The position numbers were made by a program, and so were the translations under genes. From contig NC_058374.1 in assembly GCF_018350175.1 (NCBI RefSeq), positions 1,302,001-1,366,000 of the forward strand: DNA of 64,000 nucleotides. Reading direction: 5' to 3'. Below, piece by piece: positions 1 to 39,633 of the stretch. The stretch is from Felis catus (taxonomy: Eukaryota). The notes under the pieces were generated by a model that worked only from the letters and a program-made list of their open reading frames with translations, did no database searches and was not told the DNA's origin. How positions within the stretch are numbered: position 1 is the stretch's first letter; every line of letters begins with the position of its first letter.

Positions 1-696
1 CTTTAAGGGCAAGAGTAACTTCATGTTTGTTCAATGTTTGCACTTAGTGCAGACTGTCTGCAAAGACACTCAAATTGGCTGCCCGTTACAGCAGCTTCTA
101 TGAAGCTTCTTCCAATTGAGCAGGGCCTGCCTGGGCACCGTGGTCGGAAAGCCCTTGCAGTGCTTCCAACTGACAGGAGACAGATTTCAGAGCCAGGTAA
201 AGCAGCAAATTTGACCTGCCTCGTGCAGGTACCATACAAAAGTAAGAGAAAGCATAGGTTTTGAGTCTTCTATACTGTCCAAGTGCGGCCTTTCAGAAAT
301 GACGTTAAAATTCAACGGGCAGATGTCTACCCTGCACCAGTCAGGCGGTGTGAGGAAGGACAGAGGCCGCACAGGCTCAGGTGCACACACAAAACATCCA
401 CACACGGAAGGGGGGCTGCACCAAGCTGCGACTGATGGCCAGCAGCGCTGGGTTCAGTGCTGACAAGAGCTGACGCACAAACTCGGGCTTAAATACACTG
501 AACAGTAAACTGAGTCACGCTCTCCAGTTTGAAAATGGTTAAGCTGATGCTACAGTAACTCATATCCTCATACGAACATTCAAATGACTGCTCGTTGCTT
601 AAAAAAAAACAACAAACTCAGTGACAGTTAAAAGCAATCAAAACAAAACGCTAGCATTTCCCAGCACCATAATAAAAACTGCTAAAACATACTTAC

Positions 697-3651
697 TAAA
701 TGTCCGCCTCTATTCTGCCATCCCCAAATTGCAGCGTCTTCTGCCACTGGTAGCTGATATGGCTTCTCCATCCAGAACAAAGCGACCTCTAAGTCTGGCG
801 GCTTCCTGTGCAGACACTCATCAGGCATCTGTTCCTCTTCTAAAGCGTCTTTCCCAACTGCACGAGCCCACGGACAGGCCTCTGGATAGCTGGTGCAGCC
901 GTCAGCCAGTCCTCCGGAAAATGTCTGACTCGCAAACCCTCCCACTGGGTAACAGGTGAGTTCACTCGAAAACTGGGAGTACCATCCCTCTGGGAAGCCC
1001 TGCAACCCTCCTCTTGCGAGACTTCCAGGTATCGTCACGGCGTCTTCTGTGAGTGACAGAACGTGGTCCCCACAGTGTGGTGCCACCATTTCTGCACCGC
1101 CACCTGGGATGGCGGGAATGACCTGTAGCGCCTGGTGAGGAGGGTCTGTGGATCTGTCCACGTGGGCAGGATCAACACCGGTCACACAGGAATATCCCTC
1201 AAGAGTCTCACCTAACTCCATTTCTCCAAAAGTCACCTGAGGGCTTCCCACAAAAGCCACTCCGCTGCTAAATGCAGGGCCATCAAACGTGGGCTCGGCA
1301 CCTCTTAGCTGCAGACAAGGTGCGCGCATGCTTGTCCCGCGCCTGTCAAGGCTGCCCGTCTCCCCTCCCTTACCTGCTAGTGCTGGCCTGCTTGTCCCCG
1401 ACGTGCTGCCACCCGAGGTGTCAGAACCTTCCTCCACCAACTCTGAGAAACGCTGCTCCGGTCCTGGTCCCGCATTTTCACCGCTGTTAGCAGAGTCCTT
1501 CTCTTCAAGTACTTGTGACCTCTGCTCACCTGAACTTGAACTCTGGTGTAGTGGTGGCACAGGATCAAGAACTTCATGTCTGTGGTCCTTCACTCCGCAG
1601 GCTTCATCACTTGCTTCTCCGTGGCTGGTTCTAGCACCGGGGCGCTCTGTTCTGTCGGACCTACTATGAGCCCGTGTGTCCTGACTGGGTGCTGCCCTGC
1701 GTGCTGCTGTACTGGTGTCCCAGTTAAAGGTGGCTTTCCAGTCTGACTTTGCCTTTCCTCCGACGTTCTCACTGGTCTCTCTGAGACTGGCTTTCAGGGA
1801 CTCTCTGACGGCACCTGCTAATCTTTGCTGGTCACTCTCTGCACTCTTCACACACATTTCATCTTCTGTTTTAAAATTCCGGCCAGTTTCACTTTCTTCT
1901 TCAGTGCAGGCAAAAACAAACGCGGAGGAGACGGAGTTACTCTTAAGACATCTGGAGCCATCAAGAGCCTTCCCATCCGGGGGCACTTCCCGTGAGCTTC
2001 TGAGGGCCGGGGCACCCATTCTTTGGAATACTCGCTCCGTGTTTGTGTCGGGCGGTGCACCAGTTAAATCACAGATACGTGCTTCGGCCTTGCCAGGCTC
2101 GGGATCCACACGCGGGTCTACCGGATGTGAAGATCTCCGTTCAAAAGCCCTCTGTCCACAACCCTCATCTGCAAAAATGCTCATTTTATCCTTATCCCGA
2201 GAAGATGAACAACTCTCAATCTGCAAAGACAATTCTTTATCTGCAAGCTGCATGCTCCCACGTTTCAGGCTGCAGCCAGCCCATCGCTGCCTCTCGACCA
2301 TCGCTGGACCCGGGGAGTGTTCTGGTCCAGGATCACCAGGTCTCTCAGGGGCTACTTCCTGGAAACTGGCATGAACGGGAAGACACTCATTTCCGAAGCT
2401 CAGGGGAGGAAAACACCTGTGTGAACTTAGGTCAACCCTACCTAGACGTATGAAGAGACTGTCTGGTCTGCCAGCATCGGAGCTGAAGTAATCGTTGCCT
2501 TTTAGCAGTCTGACAGAATTATTTTCTCTTTCCTTTTCAGAGTTTACACCCCGACCTCCACGGGCTGCTACAGCCCCAGATCCCCCACTTCCTGCAAGCA
2601 AATCGGCATGTGAACCTCGTGTCGGACTCACTAGTTCCTGACTCCACTCCTCGCTCTCTTCGGGGATGGCGTGCACGCGTCCTAGCGAGCCAGTGTGCGT
2701 GTCACTACTAAACTCAGTGAGCACGCCCACTTGACATGAGGCGCTGCTCTCGGTGTAATTGTTAGGGAACCCGGGGCAAGCATGTGCCCTTAAAGACATG
2801 GTCAGAAGTTCACGACCAGGGCGAGTACTTCCCTTAAGGGCTTCCTTCATTCCCCCCGGACCCGGCAGGCCCCATGGGGCCAGCTCTCCCCGCGGTGCAT
2901 CTAACCGCCCTGGGCCCCGCACAGCTTTCTCTGGAGGCCGGGACCCCCCGCGAGTCCCCTCTGCGGGGACAGCTGACCAACCGTCTTCTACCGCAGCTGC
3001 TCCACATGCAGGGGCCCCTGGCTCAGCGGCAGCGTCCAGGCAGGCGGGATCTACGACACAAATGCTGTAAAACTCGCTCCCTCTCCAATCCCTGTGTGCC
3101 TTGTGACCGACACGCACACGGTCTTCGCCCTTCATCTCCCTACCTGCCCAGCGTGGACGGGCGGCACCACTGCCGATTTCAACGGCCACCACTCCTCTCC
3201 CCTCTGGCACCGGGTCGGGCTGGGGGGCTGGGGAAGGGCCCAGACGGCTCCGGTAGGAGGGCAGCAGGGCACCAAAAGGACACTCGTCCCCTTTGGAGCA
3301 AACACCTTCAGAGAAGCCCGGGTCGCTGACAGCGCCCGCACGGCGGGCATCCGAGACACCGTCCCGGCCCTGCTCGACAGCAACAGTTTCCGAATTCTTG
3401 TCACTCCTGCGTGAGCGTCCGCACCGAGTGCGGGGTGGGAACTCCGGGGAGGAAGCAGAGCCCGCTGAGCGCCCCCGCAGACCCCGCAGACCGGGCCCGT
3501 GGGGCTTCTCCCCTTCAAGGGCATCAAATAATGAGGACAGAGCTGTGCTCCTCTGGCTCTCCGGCTCCGCCTCCTCCACAGATTTCTGCAACAGGCCGGC
3601 TTTTTCCCCGTCATTGTCGCCACCGAGTTCCCTGCTGAAGCAACAACCCAT
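697..3651 (-). CDS. LARP4B: Giant alternative coding exon in LARP4B intron 3: 985-aa alternative N-terminus starting MGCCFSRE, predicted to splice in frame to exon 4
   Basis: The frame is open from 3813 to 682. ATG at 3651 is in strong Kozak context (GGACATGG). The donor TTA|GTAAGT at 697/696 is phase 0, matching the phase-0 end of exon 3. A candidate acceptor (tgttgtttgggttttag|) lies at 3858/3857. No interspersed repeat was seen inside. The link to LARP4B is inferred from strand, position and phase. Confidence 0.75.
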
Positions 3652-4229
3652 GTCCAAAAGCTCGCACGCTCGCATAACACGCCCGGCCTTCTCGCAGCCT
3701 CCACAGGCACGTCTCGGGGAACCTGCTCTGGTTTCCGCCGGAGGCCAACACCCAGATCCCAAAATAGCCCCTTGCACGACAGTCACATGCCCCTGCCACT
3801 CAAATCCAAAATCCTAAGTGTCACAGGCCCTGCCCAGCAGCCAGCCTCTTCCACGCACTAAAACCCAAACAACACATGGATTCCAAAGATTCAGACTCAG
3901 AAAAGCGACAAGTAATTTTCACATTATTTTTCCCATTCTCATAAACTCAATTAGAAAAATGCTATAATTGTTATACGAGCCAGAACAAGGCACTTCAGAC
4001 TCCTGCCTTTTCCAGTGTTTCCACATTCTCTGAATTCTGTATCAGGGGATGTGGCAGCCACAGAGGCTGGCATGCATGCTCCCCAAAGAGTGCTCTTTAG
4101 GGTGTACAGGCAGTAGAGTTGCACCTCATTCTCTGCCTCTGAGCCTGAGGTCTGTGGGCGTGGAGGAGATTCGCACAAGAGAGGCACAAGGTTGGAGCTG
4201 GAGCGGTGTCCTTAGGGATGCACGGTGAA

Positions 4230-9619: not shown

Positions 9620-10080
9620 ACATCTCAGGCTCTAACCTCTCTGCTGAGGTCCACCTGGCCCCACCTGCCCACTTCACTGCTTGCTTTAATTTCTAACAAG
9701 AGGATTTGCTCTCCACAAACCTTTACGTCTCCAGTTTTTTCCATCTCAAAAAAAATGAAAATGCCATCCATCAAGTTGCTCAACGACCCCTGGTTTATCT
9801 TTTCCTCAGCCCAACCTCTACATCCAATCATCACTTGAACCCACTTCCAAAATAAATTTGAAATCCACTCGTTCCTAGTCTGACCCACCACCATCACTTA
9901 TAAGCTTTCATTCCTTAGTAGTTTATTTGCTTTTTTTGCTTCCATGCTTGACTCACTGCAACCCATAATATATAAAAATGTAATGAGGCCAAAATAACCT
10001 TCCTAAAAGGTAAATCACACTACTCCCCACCTAAAATCCTCCATTTTTATTCCAAGTAATTTCATCCACTCAGAAACAAT
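9620..10080 (+). mobile_element. L2 fragment
   Basis: L2-like CT-rich motifs (ccatccatcaagttgctcaa...catccaatc). Confidence 0.5.
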
Positions 10081-12851: not shown

Positions 12852-12911
12852 CTGACTCAAAGCTGGGATGGAGCTGGTCTGAGAAGTGGTTTGAGATATG
12901 GGACCATTCAT
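12852..12911 (-). CDS. LARP4B: LARP4B coding exon 3 (MNGPISQTTSQTSSIPALSQ)
   Basis: 60-nt exon flanked by tttacag| and CAG|gtaatt. It matches recalled human LARP4B residues 28-47 at 19/20. Phase 0 at both ends. Confidence 0.95.
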
Positions 12912-13553
12912 CTGTAAAATTGAAAACAGCAAACACACCATCATTACGATATAAAGCAGCATTTTCAAACCACAGTGATTTAGCAAAAACAAAACCCACT
13001 GAGGAAAACACATTTTTACATGACAAAGAAATTCAGTGAGATATTCAGAAAGAGGTAGGAGCCTTGAAACTTAAAATATCTTAAAATTCTGCCTGACCAC
13101 CGTAATTAAAATTCCTTGTAACTTCAGTGGGGAAAACTAAGAAAAATCTGTTTTTTGCTTGACATGATAAAATCTTAAAATAAACAAAAGCAATCAAAAT
13201 AAAAAATTTATAATTAATTCTTTAAATACATTCTTTAAATTAATTCTTTACATACATACCAGTACAACAGGTACAATGTTATTAAAGTACTTATAAATCA
13301 CTGCATTTTTCTTAGGAATTTAAAATCCAAAAGCTCAAAGTGTCTAAAGCTATTTGTTTTCTCTATCACCTAAGTACTTACAGCTTCCTCTACTAAGCTA
13401 CCCATAAACTGATTCAGAATATAACTCCTATATTTAGCTTATAAGATATGCCAGAGTTACTACTTTGATTTACTTCTGAAATCCAAAGGAGCATCTGTTA
13501 TCAGAAGAGGAGAGGAAGGCATCAGGCCAATTCTGGCCTCGACCCGCACTCAC

Positions 13554-13634
13554 CAGATGAGCGCTGTCTTTCCCTTCCTGGACTCGCTGGCCCTGCGGTT
13601 CAGCCACGACCTTAGTGTCCTGATCAGAAGTCAT
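13554..13634 (-). CDS. LARP4B: LARP4B first coding segment, exon 2 (MTSDQDTKVVAEPQGQRVQEGKDSAHL)
   Basis: 81 nt, matching the recalled human LARP4B N-terminus at 25/27. Donor CTG|gtgagt at 13554/13553. The best acceptor is at 13689/13688 (branch-like tactgat + polypyrimidine + cag), with alternative CAGs giving starts at 13667 and 13657. Confidence 0.95.
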
Positions 13635-35863: not shown

Positions 35864-38029
35864 AGTACGAGAGAATTCTAAGAGCACAACCATGAGGTTA
35901 TGCAAGCATATTTAAAACTTGTGCCTTTAAGGGGAGGGCAATAACAAACACAGCTTAAAGTAACATAGATCCATACTGCTTTTAACAATCTCCAAGGACC
36001 ATCATACAGAGACCACATGTTACTAAAATTAGAAGACCAAAATTATGATCCCACTTATCACTATGGAAAGTATGAATCCAGCACTACACTTTGAAATAAG
36101 AGTGGAAGGAGTCTGTCAGGCACTTCGCACTTGGTAAATGGGACCACAGGTCTAGCACTACAAAAACTTGTAAATACTGCTGCAAATCTACTTAACAGGA
36201 GTTAAACTACCTGAAGGTACTGTTTATTGTATTACTGTTAACAACCTGGTGCTCCCAACTTGCACTTTTCATATTTTAGACTTACGTTTTATATATGAAG
36301 ACTGCTTCATACAAACAAGTCACTAAAATGTGTCCACAGAGGTTAAGTATGTATTTGTCAAAACTTATGCTTACTTGTGGAAATCATATTAAGTTCAATA
36401 AATTCTCCAACTCTCAACTTCCTTTAAAGCACAATCCCTGGGAACCCTAAATAAAATCACTATCTCCCTGAATATGCTGCCATTTAATTTCATCCACTCT
36501 TCCACGAAAACACGTTAAAATGAATGCTAGCACTTGCATTATCATCTATTTTCTCTCTGGCTTCTACTCAAACATAGTGTAACTGCTTTCTCAAAATACA
36601 CATTTTATCCTCAGAATCTGCTTTCTCTGCCCAGATACATGTGATCAAGCAAAAACAAACAACCAAAACACACCAAAACAAAAACTCTCCAAAGCATTTT
36701 TTAATTTTTTATTAAAATTGACAATCACTGAATATTGAAAATAGTAATAAGGTAAACATTTTCAAGTTTTAATAAGAACTTATTATTAATTTCTATTAAT
36801 AGGTTAATGAATAGTAAAACACCCAACTTGTCACAACAACCCTAAGAGGCTGACATTATTACCCCTTCTAGAGATGGCCAGTAAAGCACCAAGAGGGTAA
36901 GTCATTTCCAACCAGTAAGACACCATGCCATTCTTCCATGTAAATAAATCAAGTCACATTAATGTTTCAAAATACAGGATGAAATTTATCTCCAACCACA
37001 GGCAAGTTTCAAAGGGAAATACACAAATCAACTTTATGGTTGAATAATAAATTTGCTAATCTGATGCTTCACTTTAGCAACCCAAGCAAACTCCAGTCAA
37101 GAGATCTCTCTTATAGCTTGTTTCACCAAACTGCCTGTCCCTATACTAAATACAGAGGAAAGCGAAAAAGCCACAACCATTTCAACTTCTGTAAATTACC
37201 CTGACTGTAAATTAGAGGGAGCCGGGCAGGTGGGGAAGTATGGAAATTGCACATTGTTCACACAGTGCACCAGGGAACATCTCTTCCCCTCCCCCCCCTT
37301 TTGCAAAGGACAACTTAGCACTTATTTCGAGTGCATTTTAAATTCTTAACACAACTTAAGAGACCAACTAAATAGCATTAAGAAAAAAAAAAAACTTTCG
37401 AAAGGGAAAGTAATTTGTATACTTACAACATTCGTCTTCGACTTGGCATTATCCTTTTTTAAAACCCTCACACTTACCAAGTAATTTCCCTGCACAGTGC
37501 AGCGAAATCGTTCGGTTTCCTCAGTTATCCAAAACTCCAAACTTCCGTTTAAGATTAGGACAAATTGCAGTGCAGCCAGGAAGACGGTGTCGAACGCTTA
37601 AGAGTTACCCTACGGATAATTTTCTAGTTGCATCTCATCCAAAATTAAAGGCCGGTTTACATAAAAATAAGAAACGAACATGCAACACAAAACTGCACCG
37701 AAATCTTAAGTTTACGTTCGGATTGGACACGCCTGAGACGCAGGTGGTAAGAGACTGCTGACCTGTCCTTTTCACCACAGTGTACCGTGGTCCTAGTTCG
37801 AACGCAGGGCATCCTTAGATTTGATTTCTCTCTAATTCCTTCAGAACCCGCCTCTGCTCAAGCCCATCGAGAGGAGAACGGGAGCTCCCCAGACACACCC
37901 GGAGCAACAGGATCCCCACTTCCTGGTCCGAATGACCCCGTCCCCTCCCCGTTCGGCCGGCCGCCGGGGCCTGGGCCCGGGGCGGAGGGCAGGGCGAGGC
38001 CTCTGCAGTGCGGGCGGGACGGCGGCGCT

Positions 38030-38140
38030 GGCCCGGCCCCGACCCCCACGCCCCCGGCCCCGACTCCCGGCCCCGACCCCCACGCCCCCGACTCCCACCC
38101 CCGACCCCCGCGCCCCGGCCCCGACCCCCGGCCTTGCACC
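38030..38140. repeat. Degenerate C-rich tandem repeat (CCCCGACCCC-like units) at the start of intron 1
   Basis: Repeated ccccgacccc/ccccggcccc/ccccgactccc units; G-rich on the transcribed strand. Confidence 0.7.
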
Positions 38141-38345
38141 CGGGCCCCGCAGCCCGGCGCGGCCCCGCCACCACGGCCCTGCCCGCCGCCCGGCCCCGTC
38201 CGGCCCGCCCGCCGCCCGCCGCCGCGTCCTCCGGGAAGATGGCGGCCCGTGACAGGCGGGCGCGGCGCGGGTCCGAGGCGGCGGCCCGGCTCCAAGCGGG
38301 AAGCGGAGAGGACGGAGCGGCCCGCTCGCCGCCTGCCGCGCTCAC

Positions 38346-38620
38346 CTGTCAGCAGCGCCGCCGCCGCCCGGCCGCCGACCGCCGCAGCCCCGGTGCCCGG
38401 CGACCGCGCCACACGCGGACGGGGCCGAGAGGGAGGGGCGGGGAGGGCGCGGCCGGCCCGGACGAGCGGCGGGGGCGGCGCGGCGCGGCGCGGGCTGGCG
38501 GCGGGCGGCGGCGGCTCCTTCCCGTTTCGGGCCCGAAAATGTCTCAACCTCGCGACTCCGGCGCCCCAACGCTCCTTCCCGTTCGCATGAGAACACACAG
38601 CTCCCACTTCCGGGGCTCGG
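38346..38620 (-). other. LARP4B: LARP4B non-coding exon 1 (5' end approximate)
   Basis: Donor CAG|gtgag at 38346/38345 inside the CpG island, 24.7 kb upstream of exon 2. The TSS is estimated from paired ETS sites and upstream CCAAT boxes. Confidence 0.75.
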
Positions 38621-39001
38621 CGGAAGTCCCGCCTCGCGCGCCCGCGCACCCGCGCGCCCTCGGACTCAGCGGCCGGGCCCGCCGACTGGCGCTCTACGCC
38701 CGGGAGAGCCTCTCGTCATGGCAGCGCGGCGTCCCGATTGGCTGCGTGCGGCGCCCGGCCCTCCCCTCTGCTTCCCGGCCTTTCCGTGCGCGCGCCCCTC
38801 CCGGCTGCGCTTGTGATTGGCGCGGGCGCGCACGCAACCCCGCCCCGCCCCGCCGTCCCCTCGGTCCCCACCGCCCCCGCTGCGACTTGAGGAGGCGGCG
38901 CCGTAGCGTAGTCCTGCGACCTCCGCCTTGCTAGCAGATGGCCGTCTCCCGGCACCCCGGTCCCCGCCTCCCAAGACCACGACCCCCGACCCCCGACCCC
39001 C

Positions 39002-39115
39002 TCACCCGAGACCGCGACCCCGTCCCCCCCTCACCCCGGGACCGCGACCCCGTCCCCCCTTCACCCTAGGACCGCGACCCGGTCTCCCCCTCACCCTGGG
39101 ATGGCGACCCCGCCC
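39002..39115. repeat. ~30-bp minisatellite x4 (TCACCCnnGGACCGCGACCCCGTCCCCCC)
   Basis: Units start at 39002, 39031, 39061 and 39091. Confidence 0.85.
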
Positions 39116-39633
39116 GCAGACCCCTGCCCCTCAGTGCCTGAACAGACACACCCACACACCACTTCTCCCCCCGCTCCCGCCCGGTCCGCCCAGGCGCAGG
39201 TTGGGCCCCGGAGAGCCCCGGGGCGCCGGGCGTCAGCTCCGTGCTGCAGGCTCTCCCGGGTCTCGAGTCACATTGTGTCACCCACCCACACCCGTGGTGC
39301 GGGGACGGAAGACAAGTGTGTTCACCTCCTTGAAGCCGGCTCCCTACTGAGCACTGATCGTATGGACGTAAGGACGTGGACATTTGAATTAGTCCCATTG
39401 CAGTTCACACGTACTGAAGGTGTTTTCTGGTCACTGCCCAGCCAGTCCCTGCACCTGTGCTTCCCATTCGTGCTGCGGAGGGACGTGTGCATGCAGGTGT
39501 GCGCTTGGACTTCCACGTCCTCAGGGCCCGGCGCGTCCTCAGGCCCCGGTGTTGGGTGCACTTTGCTGGATGACCATGTCACCTCCCGGCTCTAAGGAGC
39601 TTGCACACTACATAGTGATATTCACGGCAAGAC

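What the first reader, a model, noticed from the sequence alone, without database searches (positions are those of the whole stretch)
3586..3651. N-terminus of the giant exon mimics the LAMTOR1 lysosomal anchor (myristoylation + dual palmitoylation + acidic dileucine)
Seen: M1-G2-C3-C4-F5-S6-R-E-L-G-G-D-N-D-G-E16-K-A-G-L20-L21, with the ATG in strong Kozak context. Established: MGxxxS is the NMT consensus, Cys3/Cys4 next to myristoyl-Gly2 are typical S-palmitoylation sites, and [DE]xxxL[LI] is the AP-complex endolysosomal sorting signal. LAMTOR1/p18 ([23 protein letters not shown]) uses the same three elements with nearly the same spacing. Inference: a splice/start switch could turn a cytosolic poly(A)/PABP/ribosome-binding protein into a membrane-tethered one. 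A long flexible linker would then hold mRNPs or ribosomes on late endosomes/lysosomes, for local translation, RNA hitchhiking or mTORC1-proximal control. This would be a previously undescribed mRNA-organelle tether.
Basis: partly seen in the sequence, partly recalled or inferred. Interest (0 to 1): 0.88.

Follow-up and report, generated by a model that had tools for sequence, protein, structure and literature searches.

The report
Lipid-anchor start of long LARP4B isoform
A huge alternative exon inside the gene for the mRNA-binding protein LARP4B opens with a start sequence, unchanged from gar and coelacanth to mammals, that looks like a fatty-acid membrane anchor plus an endosome/lysosome sorting signal, so this apparently unstudied isoform probably holds an mRNA/poly(A)-binding module on a membrane.

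Summary
Window 3651-3586 (minus strand) encodes MGCCFSRELGGDNDGEKAGLLQ, with G at -3 and +4 of the ATG. It opens a 985-codon exon inside LARP4B of a felid genome.

In 97 distinct orthologous N-termini, M-G-C-C-F and ExxxLL are invariant. Ser6 is kept in 88 and Lys7 in 91. Residues 1-21 have the lowest dN/dS in the exon (0.17, against 0.53 in the middle). Nine of nine other species have an in-frame stop 6-42 nt upstream, so this Met opens the ORF.

A fully spliced mouse mRNA contig joins this ORF to the PAM2w, La and RRM exons. AlphaFold2 predicts the exon as disordered. MGCCFSK is 7 of 8 identical to the engineered MARCKS membrane tag of mT/mG mice. The layout matches the validated 39-residue LAMTOR1 lysosome tag.

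Lipidation, lysosomal location and mRNA tethering were not shown. The transcript's 5' end is unresolved and no reads could be laid.

This cat has a caveat. The usual upstream stop is CGA here, which puts ATG 3675 in frame, and initiation there would block myristoylation.

RefSeq and Ensembl already predict the isoform in many species, but I found no paper on it. Interest 0.74.

The parts
3586..3651 (-). Codons 1-22, MGCCFSRELGGDNDGEKAGLLQ. Met1-Gly2 with Ser6 is an N-myristoylation consensus, Cys3/Cys4 are candidate S-palmitoylation sites, and E16-K-A-G-L20-L21 is an acidic dileucine.
   Evidence: M1 G2 C3 C4 F5 E16 L20 L21 are invariant in 24, 26 and 97 orthologous N-termini. dN/dS for residues 1-21 is 0.17.
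3649..3651 (-). Initiator ATG of the long isoform (context ggacATGg).
   Evidence: A purine at -3 and G at +4 are kept in 9 of the 10 species aligned (window G, most others A; L009 has a pyrimidine at -3). In-frame stops lie 6-42 nt upstream in 9 of 9 other species and in the mouse mRNA contig L016.
3502..3585 (-). Codons 23-50. This is a second conserved block (consensus KSVEEKEPENKISKTLSSLFDTLEGEEL) of unknown role. It is partly eroded in this felid (I34R, L50P).
   Evidence: dN/dS 0.37.
697..3651 (-). Coding part of the giant alternative LARP4B exon: 985 codons with no stop, predicted disordered, ending in phase 0.
   Evidence: AlphaFold2 mean pLDDT 36.6 and no secondary structure. dN/dS about 0.5 in the middle. 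No Pfam domain.
695..696 (-). GT of the 5' splice site (TTA|gtaagt). Splicing to the PAM2w exon at G000:C16:1298840 gives ...GGHL|VPTAKVSELNPNAKVWG in frame.
   Evidence: The fishing-cat model P0002 has the same junction. The equivalent junction is used in mouse mRNA contig L016.
3673..3675 (-). In-frame upstream ATG of this lineage (context gttATGc). If used it yields MRACELLD-MGCC... with no N-terminal glycine.
   Evidence: Most aligned mammals have ATG-TGA here, and this genome has ATG-CGA.
3783..3788 (-). ATG-TGA 'start-stop' mini-uORF about 137 nt upstream of the main ATG. It is also the stop that ends the canonical frame if exon 2 splices to the acceptor at 3857.
   Evidence: Present in all 8 mammalian sequences aligned. 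Frame worked out.
3746..3891 (-). Non-coding block conserved from mammals to a bird and a squamate. It includes CATGTGAC and the 10-mer CTATTTTTGG (window 3767-3759), which lacks one T in this cat. It is either a candidate promoter or a 5' leader element.
   Evidence: The mouse mRNA contig begins downstream of it, at -57.
697..762 (-). Conserved C-terminal island of the exon, PYQLPV..IWGWQNRGGHL, immediately before the PAM2w motif.
12852..12911 (-). Canonical LARP4B coding exon 2 (...SSIPALSQ, ends in phase 0). The long isoform lacks it.
13548..13634 (-). Canonical LARP4B first coding exon (MTSDQDAKVVAEPQ...). The long isoform lacks it.

Best explanation
The 22 codons are the true, deeply conserved N-terminus of a long isoform of LARP4B, which I call LARP4B-L. 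The isoform is about 1,670 residues in this cat and 1,723 in mouse. Translation starts at ATG 3651 inside a giant alternative exon that lies between canonical coding exon 2 and the PAM2w exon. The product replaces the first 47 canonical residues with three parts: (i) MGCCFS(K/R)E, (ii) an acidic spacer ending in ExxxLL, and (iii) about 960 residues of disordered chain carrying a few conserved short motifs. The unchanged PAM2w, La-RRM and C-terminal parts of LARP4B follow. Inferred mechanism: Met1 is removed and Gly2 is N-myristoylated as the chain is made. Cys3 and Cys4 are then S-palmitoylated, which gives stable attachment to the cytosolic face of a membrane. The acidic dileucine is read by AP adaptor complexes, which send the protein into the endosome and late endosome/lysosome system, as for LAMTOR1. 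The PABP-, poly(A)/AU-rich-RNA- and RACK1/ribosome-binding module would then sit on a long flexible leash at that membrane. Shown here: the sequence, its conservation pattern, the start of the ORF, the in-frame join to the La module (as DNA in this genome, as spliced RNA in mouse), and the disorder. Inferred: both lipidations, the compartment, and any tethering of mRNA.
For: Sequence and start context. Conservation: invariant M1 G2 C3 C4 F5 E16 L20 L21 in 24 and in 26 aligned orthologs; in 97 distinct N-termini MGCCF is 97/97, ExxxLL 97/97, Ser6 88/97, Lys7 91/97. Taxa run from gar and coelacanth through turtles, crocodile, snake, birds, monotremes and marsupials to rodents, primates, ungulates, bats and carnivores. 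Constraint at the protein level: the changes in the MGCCFS codons are synonymous third-position changes (GGT/GGC, TGT/TGC, AGC/AGT), and Leu codons switch between TTA and CTG. dN/dS is 0.17 for residues 1-21 against 0.53 for the middle of the exon. In this fast-evolving felid, 14 of the first 50 residues differ from the majority, but none of M1 G2 C3 C4 F5 E8 E16 L20 L21 does. Start of the ORF: in-frame stops 6-42 nt upstream in 9 of 9 other species, and 183 of 195 database models begin at this Met. RNA: mouse contig L016 (7,354 nt) aligns to the mouse genome as giant exon plus 15 downstream exons and encodes exactly XP_011242555.1 from MGCC to the LARP4B stop, with La and RRM_LARP4 domains. 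Its 57-nt leader has in-frame stops and only an out-of-frame ATG-TGA. This genome: the donor at 697 and the PAM2w exon are both phase 0, and all downstream LARP4B exons lie on the same strand. Disorder: mean pLDDT 36.6. Precedents: MGCCFSKT is the myristoyl/palmitoyl membrane tag of mT/mG mice. The first 39 residues of LAMTOR1 carry myristoylation, palmitoylation and an acidic dileucine, and target fusion proteins to lysosomes. Pairwise BLASTP of residues 1-40 against the p18 tag gives 15/40 identities. LARP4B's PAM2w binds the MLLE domain of PABPC1, and LARP4B binds AU-rich mRNA (PMC7356810 and PMC4478348, listed).
Against: No lipid, localisation or RNA-tethering data exist, and none could be produced here. 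The 5' end of the mRNA is unknown: the mouse contig simply stops at -57, and no reads could be laid on the window. The run searches did not give usable RNA evidence for this species. In this cat an in-frame ATG lies 24 nt upstream (3675). If that ATG is on the mRNA and is used, Gly2 is never exposed. The cat also has I34R, L50P and a 1-nt deletion in the otherwise invariant upstream 10-mer, which hints at relaxed constraint in felids. Bovids carry Arg or His at position 6, which is poor for N-myristoyltransferase by established substrate rules. About 6% of database models carry lineage-specific in-frame upstream ATGs. The engineered MGCCFSKT tag goes to the plasma membrane, so the lysosomal address rests on the dileucine alone. 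The profile search did not recover LAMTOR1, so the resemblance is functional analogy and not shown homology.
Confidence: 0.6

Rival explanations
1. The anchor is real but the address is different. Dual acylation takes LARP4B-L to the plasma membrane, Golgi or recycling endosomes. The dileucine then only drives AP-2 endocytosis or AP-1/AP-3 sorting to another compartment, for example synaptic or lysosome-related vesicles, and not to LAMTOR1-type late endosomes/lysosomes.
For: The 8-residue MGCCFSKT tag, 7 of 8 identical, labels the cell membrane in mT/mG mice. Nothing downstream of residue 21 resembles LAMTOR1, and LAMTOR1 was not found by the profile. By established knowledge, [DE]xxxL[LI] signals serve AP-1, AP-2 and AP-3 alike.
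Against: LAMTOR1 has the same three elements at almost the same spacing, and its first 39 residues suffice for lysosome targeting. ExxxLL is invariant in 97/97 N-termini, with the acidic residue at position 16 in 85 of them, so it is as constrained as the acylation sites.
Confidence: 0.25
2. In this felid the signal is bypassed or decaying. Ribosomes start mainly at the in-frame ATG 3675, giving MRACELLDMGCC... without a free Gly2, so the cat protein is mostly unlipidated even if orthologs are anchored.
For: ATG 3675 is in frame with no stop before 3651, because the TGA found in most other mammals is CGA here. It has a purine at -3. The cat also departs at I34, L50 and the upstream 10-mer. Two NCBI models examined, for a felid (P0002) and a mongoose (P0005), start at internal Mets.
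Against: ATG 3675 has C at +4, whereas ATG 3651 has G at -3 and +4, so leaky scanning is expected. All anchor and dileucine residues are intact despite 14 changes in 50 residues. The 985-codon ORF is intact here and 986 codons long in a 67%-identical relative. Whether 3675 lies on the mRNA at all is unknown.
Confidence: 0.15
3. The conservation is at the nucleotide level. The MGCCFS codons (gggttgttgcttcag|C) serve as a 3' splice site, or the exon is mainly a regulatory 'poison' exon. Little or no protein would start at this Met.
For: The codons form a pyrimidine tract plus CAG, and TTCAG is invariant in 10 species. Two bat gene models splice in exactly there (...|SKELSGDND). Exon 2 joined to the acceptor at 3857 runs into the ATG-TGA at 3788-3783, about 24 codons into the giant exon, which would make an NMD substrate.
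Against: A splice site explains neither the invariant ATG-GG nor E16, L20 and L21, nor the codon-periodic synonymous changes, nor dN/dS of 0.17. A 3-kb ORF kept open from gar to mammals needs selection on the protein. The mouse mRNA contig reads straight through these codons with 57 nt of contiguous leader. The AG at 3858 is absent in three of nine other species.
Confidence: 0.07
4. The main product is a stand-alone membrane-anchored disordered protein of about 990-1,050 residues. It would arise by read-through of the donor and a stop 4 codons into the intron, so it has no La module and no RNA is tethered.
For: Ensembl and NCBI list stand-alone 'uncharacterized protein' models of 1,026-1,148 residues in gelada, colobus, turtles, crocodile, cobra and a bat.
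Against: Most such entries are ORF calls on unspliced genomic contigs. The donor is consensus-like (TTA|gtaagt) and in phase with the PAM2w exon. The exon's last 22 residues are conserved right up to the junction. The mouse contig is spliced to all downstream exons.
Confidence: 0.1

Closest known systems
LAMTOR1/p18 N-terminal lysosome-targeting signal (residues 1-39)
   Same: It starts MGCC[YF]S.E, has an acidic/Ser-rich spacer, and then an acidic dileucine ending at residues 21-23. Myristoylation, dual palmitoylation and the dileucine together place a peripheral protein on the cytosolic face of late endosomes/lysosomes. The tag is transferable.
   Different: No similarity beyond about residue 23. 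LARP4B-L has no Ragulator-scaffolding region. The profile search did not retrieve LAMTOR1. The dileucine sits one residue closer to Gly2. The cargo is an RNA-binding module and not Rag-GTPase scaffolding.
Engineered MARCKS(A3C,Q4C) tag MGCCFSKT of mT/mG reporter mice
   Same: Seven of eight residues are identical to the ortholog consensus MGCCFSKE. The tag is documented as myristoylated on Gly2 with two added palmitoylation cysteines, and it drives membrane attachment of a fused protein.
   Different: It is synthetic, only 8 residues long, has no dileucine, and is reported at the cell membrane. LARP4B-L is natural and adds ExxxLL.
Canonical LARP4B (738 residues) and LARP4A
   Same: Same gene and the same PAM2w, La, RRM and C-terminal exons. 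They bind PABPC1 MLLE, AU-rich or poly(A) RNA, and RACK1/ribosomes (papers listed).
   Different: The canonical form is soluble and starts MTSDQDAK.... The long form swaps those 47 residues for an anchor plus a leash of about 985 residues. No comparable N-terminus turned up outside LARP4B in the profile search.
Organelle-mRNA tethers: ANXA11 on lysosomes (PMC6890474), and AKAP1-linked LARP4 at mitochondria (PMC10870378 for LARP4; the AKAP1 link is from my own knowledge)
   Same: The concept is the same: an adaptor couples mRNPs to a moving or metabolically active organelle for transport or local translation.
   Different: Those tethers bind membranes reversibly (Ca2+/phosphoinositide binding by ANXA11) or through a partner protein. 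Here the RNA-binding protein itself would be covalently lipid-anchored. Nothing of this was tested for LARP4B-L.
HIV-1 Nef (own knowledge, not tested here)
   Same: A myristoylated peripheral protein whose ExxxLL in a flexible loop engages AP complexes.
   Different: Viral, folded core, no palmitoylation, unrelated sequence.

Membership tests
N-myristoylated / S-palmitoylated ('MGC'-type dual-acylated) N-termini | Gly at position 2 directly after the initiator Met | tested here: met
   Gly2 is in 97/97 distinct orthologous N-termini.
N-myristoylated / S-palmitoylated ('MGC'-type dual-acylated) N-termini | Small or hydroxyl residue at position 6 (Ser/Thr preferred), no Pro or acidic clash at positions 3-8, basic residue at 7 favourable | tested here: met
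   The window has S6 and R7. Orthologs have S6 in 88/97 and K7 in 91/97. The exceptions are R/H in bovids and G/A/C elsewhere. The substrate rule itself is established knowledge.
N-myristoylated / S-palmitoylated ('MGC'-type dual-acylated) N-termini | Cysteine(s) next to the myristoyl-glycine | tested here: met
   C3 and C4 are invariant.
N-myristoylated / S-palmitoylated ('MGC'-type dual-acylated) N-termini | This Met is the one used for initiation | tested here: inconclusive
   For: in-frame stops upstream in 9/9 other species, the mouse mRNA leader, and a conserved strong context. Against, for this genome: the in-frame ATG 3675. There are no initiation data.
N-myristoylated / S-palmitoylated ('MGC'-type dual-acylated) N-termini | Fatty acids actually attached | not testable with these tools
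   Needs metabolic labelling or mass spectrometry. The only indirect support is the engineered MGCCFSKT tag.
LAMTOR1-type lysosomal targeting signal | Myristoylation and palmitoylation sites plus an acidic dileucine within about 25 residues of the N-terminus | tested here: met
   LAMTOR1 features as described and its sequence.
LAMTOR1-type lysosomal targeting signal | Sufficiency for late endosome/lysosome localisation | not testable with these tools
   Needs imaging of a 1-40 fusion protein.
LAMTOR1 protein family (homology) | Detectable sequence relationship beyond the tag, and a Ragulator-binding region | tested here: not met
   The profile of residues 1-70 against 1.84 billion proteins returned only LARP4B long isoforms plus noise. 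The pairwise match covers only the tag region.
[DE]xxxL[LI] adaptor-complex sorting signals | Acidic residue at -4 from LL, in an accessible, unstructured, cytosol-facing segment | tested here: met
   E16xxxL20L21, invariant. The segment has pLDDT below 50.
[DE]xxxL[LI] adaptor-complex sorting signals | Binding to AP-1, AP-2 or AP-3 hemicomplexes | not testable with these tools
   The adaptor subunits are not available to the complex predictor here, and no assay was possible.
LARP4B (La-related protein 4B) | PAM2w motif, La motif and LARP4-type RRM encoded in frame downstream on the same strand | tested here: met
   This genome. La domain in long orthologs. La plus RRM_LARP4 in the mouse mRNA contig.

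The most novel reading that the evidence does not exclude
LARP4B-L is a covalently lipid-anchored endolysosomal tether for mRNPs and ribosomes. A myristoyl/dipalmitoyl/dileucine head fixes it to late endosomes or lysosomes. A leash of about 1,000 disordered residues carries conserved short motifs, namely (E/K)FYSIC(V/A)(V/I)D and PYQL..IWGWQ, that may recruit further partners. The PAM2w/La-RRM/RACK1-binding tail captures polyadenylated mRNAs and ribosomes for hitchhiking or local translation near mTORC1. Expression would come from its own intronic, uORF-gated transcription unit, conserved across bony vertebrates.
Probability: 0.22. Interest if true: 0.88.

Novelty: new variant of a known kind. 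Interest (0 to 1): 0.74.

Why it matters
LARP4B is treated in the literature as a soluble cytoplasmic factor that binds PABP, AU-rich mRNA and ribosome-associated RACK1. A second isoform conserved for more than 400 million years, whose only strongly constrained new part is a membrane-anchor and sorting signal, implies that part of LARP4B's function takes place on a membrane. If the anchor works like LAMTOR1's, the RNA-binding protein itself would be fixed to the endolysosomal surface, instead of being recruited through a reversible adaptor such as ANXA11. That would make questions about local translation at lysosomes and RNA hitchhiking directly testable with an isoform-specific knockout, since deleting one exon leaves canonical LARP4B intact. 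The isoform is predicted in mouse and macaques, so standard models are available. It also warns that antibodies, knockouts and RNA-seq quantification of 'LARP4B' may have been mixing two very different proteins.

Tried and rejected
No read-level evidence exists for this window.

2. The look-up of sequencing runs listed many runs of the organism that hold the exon and the upstream stretch. The column I first read as run size matches genome size for DNA runs. The 'RNA?' labels are guesses, and the only runs on record as RNA are metatranscriptomes that also hold intron sequence. I do not count any of this as evidence of expression.

3. Pfam on the exon gave nothing above threshold. The ESM Atlas feature search on residues 1-60 gave no usable hit.

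4. The roughly 1,040-residue Logan 'proteins' looked like possible stand-alone transcripts. They proved to be ORF calls on unspliced genomic contigs. L017 is collinear with the mouse genome and uninformative.

5. I considered an FFAT-like reading of SLFDTLE (residues 39-46). I dropped it because the Asp is Gly in birds and position 2 is Leu.

6. I considered MITF/TFE (CLEAR-like) and MEF2/CArG readings of the conserved upstream CATGTGAC and CTATTTTTGG. The E-box is not kept in the bird or the squamate, and nothing here can test promoter function, so these remain leads only.

7. Homology to LAMTOR1 is rejected.

8. Literature searches for LARP4B with myristoyl, palmitoyl or isoform plus lysosome, and a scan of a LARP4A/B paper and of the ANXA11 lysosome paper, found nothing on this isoform.
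Full report
**Observation**

The minus strand of window 3651-3586 reads ATG GGT TGT TGC TTC AGC AGG GAA ..., which is MGCCFSRELGGDNDGEKAGLLQ. The plus strand gives nothing of note. The ATG has G at -3 and G at +4. It opens 985 codons without a stop, down to a TTA|gtaagt splice donor whose last exon base is 697.

**Where it sits**

- The window is G000:C16:1302001-1366000 of a 2.4-Gb carnivore genome. The closest named protein, at 97% identity, is a fishing-cat LARP4B model.
- Canonical LARP4B coding exons lie upstream on the same strand: MTSDQDAK... at 13634-13548 and ...SSIPALSQ at 12911-12852, the latter ending in phase 0.
- The next LARP4B exon starts 3.9 kb beyond the donor, at C16:1298840, also in phase 0. 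It reads VPTAKVSELNPNAKVWG, which is the PAM2w motif. All remaining exons follow on the same strand down to C16:1251763.
- The giant exon is therefore an alternative exon of LARP4B. From ATG 3651 it reads in frame into PAM2w, the La motif, the RRM and the C-terminal region. The predicted cat product is about 985 + 687 residues.

- A word-based search and a profile search of 1.84 billion representatives found the same N-terminus only in LARP4B long isoforms, almost always at residue 1.
- Named sources include spotted gar, coelacanth, turtles, crocodile, cobra, chicken and many other birds, platypus, echidna, opossum, mouse (XP_011242555.1), other rodents, macaques and New World monkeys, a lemur, pig, ruminants, camel, hippo, horse family, bats, seals, fox and otter.
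- In alignments of 24 and 26 orthologs the invariant positions include M1 G2 C3 C4 F5 E16 L20 L21 and S35.
- Over 97 distinct N-termini, MGCCF is 97/97 and ExxxLL is 97/97. Residue 6 is Ser in 88, with Arg or His in bovids and Gly, Ala or Cys in a few others. Residue 7 is Lys in 91. The acidic residue is at position 16 in 85.

**Protein-level or nucleotide-level constraint**

- I aligned genomic DNA from nine other species around the ATG. The changes inside the six codons are synonymous (GGT/GGC, TGT/TGC, AGC/AGT). Further on, Leu codons switch between TTA and CTG while the residue is kept.
- Pooled Nei-Gojobori dN/dS is 0.17 for residues 1-21 and 0.37 for residues 22-50. It is 0.53 for the middle of the exon and 0.46 for its C-terminal end.
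- The same six codons also look like a 3' splice site (ttgttgcttcag|C), and two bat gene models splice in exactly there. That cannot explain the invariant ATG-GG or the invariant E16/L20/L21.
- A mouse mRNA contig reads straight through the site.

**Is this Met the start?**

- All nine other species have an in-frame stop 6-42 nt upstream of the ATG. It is a TGA at -21 in six of them.
- Upstream sequence differs between close relatives by indels that are not multiples of three. The AG at 3858, which the scan's other note uses as the exon's acceptor, is missing in three of the nine.
- If canonical exon 2 (phase 0) is joined to 3857, the frame runs into the ATG-TGA at 3788-3783, about 24 codons into the giant exon. 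In this genome the canonical AUG therefore cannot read into the giant ORF by that route.
- 183 of 195 database models begin at this Met. The other 12 carry short upstream extensions that differ between lineages.

**RNA evidence**

- The exact mouse isoform X1 protein (1,723 residues) is encoded on a 7,354-nt Logan contig, L016. Aligned to the mouse genome, this contig is the 3,146-nt giant exon, then 15 spliced downstream exons, then a 2.4-kb 3' UTR. It can only come from mature mRNA.
- The ORF of L016 runs from MGCC to the LARP4B stop and carries La and RRM_LARP4.
- Its 57-nt leader is contiguous with the genome. It contains three in-frame stops and only an out-of-frame ATG-TGA.
- A second mouse contig, judged by its length, also begins about 58 nt upstream. 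This hints at a transcript end near there, downstream of the conserved upstream block, but contig ends are not cap sites.

**The rest of the exon**

- AlphaFold2 with 26 orthologs gives mean pLDDT 36.6 and no secondary structure.
- The composition is 69% disorder-promoting residues. Pfam finds no domain.
- A few short islands are conserved to coelacanth: (E/K)FYSIC(V/A)(V/I)D (window 3075-3049), GYLW, and PYQL..IWGWQ at the very end of the exon (762-697) just before PAM2w.
- 'Long flexible linker' is a fair description.

**How it most likely works**

- By established N-myristoyltransferase substrate rules, G2 with S6 and K/R7 is a good substrate.
- The natural MARCKS N-terminus, with residues 3 and 4 changed to Cys, gives MGCCFSKT. 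This is the myristoyl/palmitoyl membrane tag of mT/mG mice and is 7 of 8 identical to the ortholog consensus.
- The first 39 residues of LAMTOR1 ([23 protein letters not shown]...) combine the same acylation sites with an acidic dileucine and are used routinely to place proteins on lysosomes.
- Pairwise BLASTP of residues 1-40 against that tag gives 15/40 identities. The database profile did not retrieve LAMTOR1, so I treat this as analogy and not homology.
- I therefore rate membrane anchoring of LARP4B-L as likely (about 0.75, if this AUG is used). I rate an endolysosomal address as the best single guess (about 0.4). Tethering of PABP-bound mRNAs or ribosomes there follows plausibly from LARP4B's known partners (papers) but is untested.

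**Caveats specific to this genome**

- The felid exon is GC-rich (0.58, against 0.40-0.57 in the other species aligned) and fast-evolving.
- Fourteen of its first 50 residues differ from the majority, including I34R and L50P at positions invariant elsewhere. None of M1 G2 C3 C4 F5 E8 E16 L20 L21 is touched.
- The usual upstream TGA is CGA, which puts ATG 3675 in frame. One T is missing from the otherwise invariant upstream 10-mer CTATTTTTGG.
- The cat may therefore make a mixture of lipidated and unlipidated protein, or the signal may be under weaker constraint in felids.

**Novelty**

The sequence is not new to databases, since RefSeq and Ensembl predict it widely. I found no paper that mentions a long, lipidated or membrane-bound LARP4B. 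The parts are known kinds: a dual-acylation head, a dileucine signal, and a La-module RNA-binding protein. The combination would be a new variant of organelle-mRNA coupling, namely a covalently anchored RNA-binding protein.

**Handling notes**

Runs of N in the window were left as they are.

Noticed in passing
window 3783-3788 (-), and about -24 in other mammals (L002, L006, L007, mouse L016): Two minimal ATG-TGA 'start-stop' uORFs lie in the leader of the MGCC ORF. The one near -137 is present in all 8 mammalian sequences aligned. The one near -24 is present in several species and has become ATG-CGA (in frame) in this cat. They suggest translational gating of the long isoform.
   Followed up: partly
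window 3746-3891 (-): A non-coding block upstream of the ATG is conserved from mammals to a bird and a squamate. It includes CATGTGAC and the invariant 10-mer CTATTTTTGG (MEF2/CArG/TATA-like). The mouse mRNA contig starts downstream of it at -57, so an intronic promoter is possible.
   Followed up: partly
window 3049-3075 (-): The short motif (E/K)FYSIC(V/A)(V/I)D is conserved from coelacanth to mammals inside the otherwise disordered exon. The E-F-Y-S start resembles FFAT/phospho-FFAT motifs that bind ER VAP proteins. This was not scored.
   Followed up: no
window 697-762 (-): The exon ends with the conserved motif PYQLPV..IWGWQNRGGHL directly abutting the PAM2w motif of the next exon. It could modulate PABP MLLE binding or recruit another partner.
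   Followed up: no
window 3634-3648 (-): The codons for GCCFS form a pyrimidine tract plus CAG. Two phyllostomid-bat gene models (P0016, P0021) use this as an internal acceptor. That would keep the dileucine but remove the acylation sites.
   Followed up: partly
window 37800-39600: A strong CpG island (GC 0.74, CpG observed/expected 0.95) lies about 24 kb upstream of the canonical LARP4B start codon on the gene's strand. It is probably the main LARP4B promoter and first non-coding exon.
   Followed up: no
window 697-3651 (-): The exon is more GC-rich than most orthologs aligned (0.58 against 0.40-0.57). Most of the felid-specific N-terminal changes I checked by eye go from A/T to G/C. With the locus 1.3 Mb from a contig end, this fits GC-biased gene conversion.
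   Followed up: partly
orthologs P0046, P0281, P0283, P0285, P0286 (bovids): Bovid N-termini read MGCCFRKE or MGCCFHKE. Ser6, the residue preferred by N-myristoyltransferase, is lost while Gly2, Cys3/4 and ExxxLL are kept.
   Followed up: no
window 9667-9765 (-): This stretch matches an extra coding exon used only in the vampire-bat LARP4B X2 model (57% identity). It may be a lineage-specific or spurious exon.
   Followed up: no
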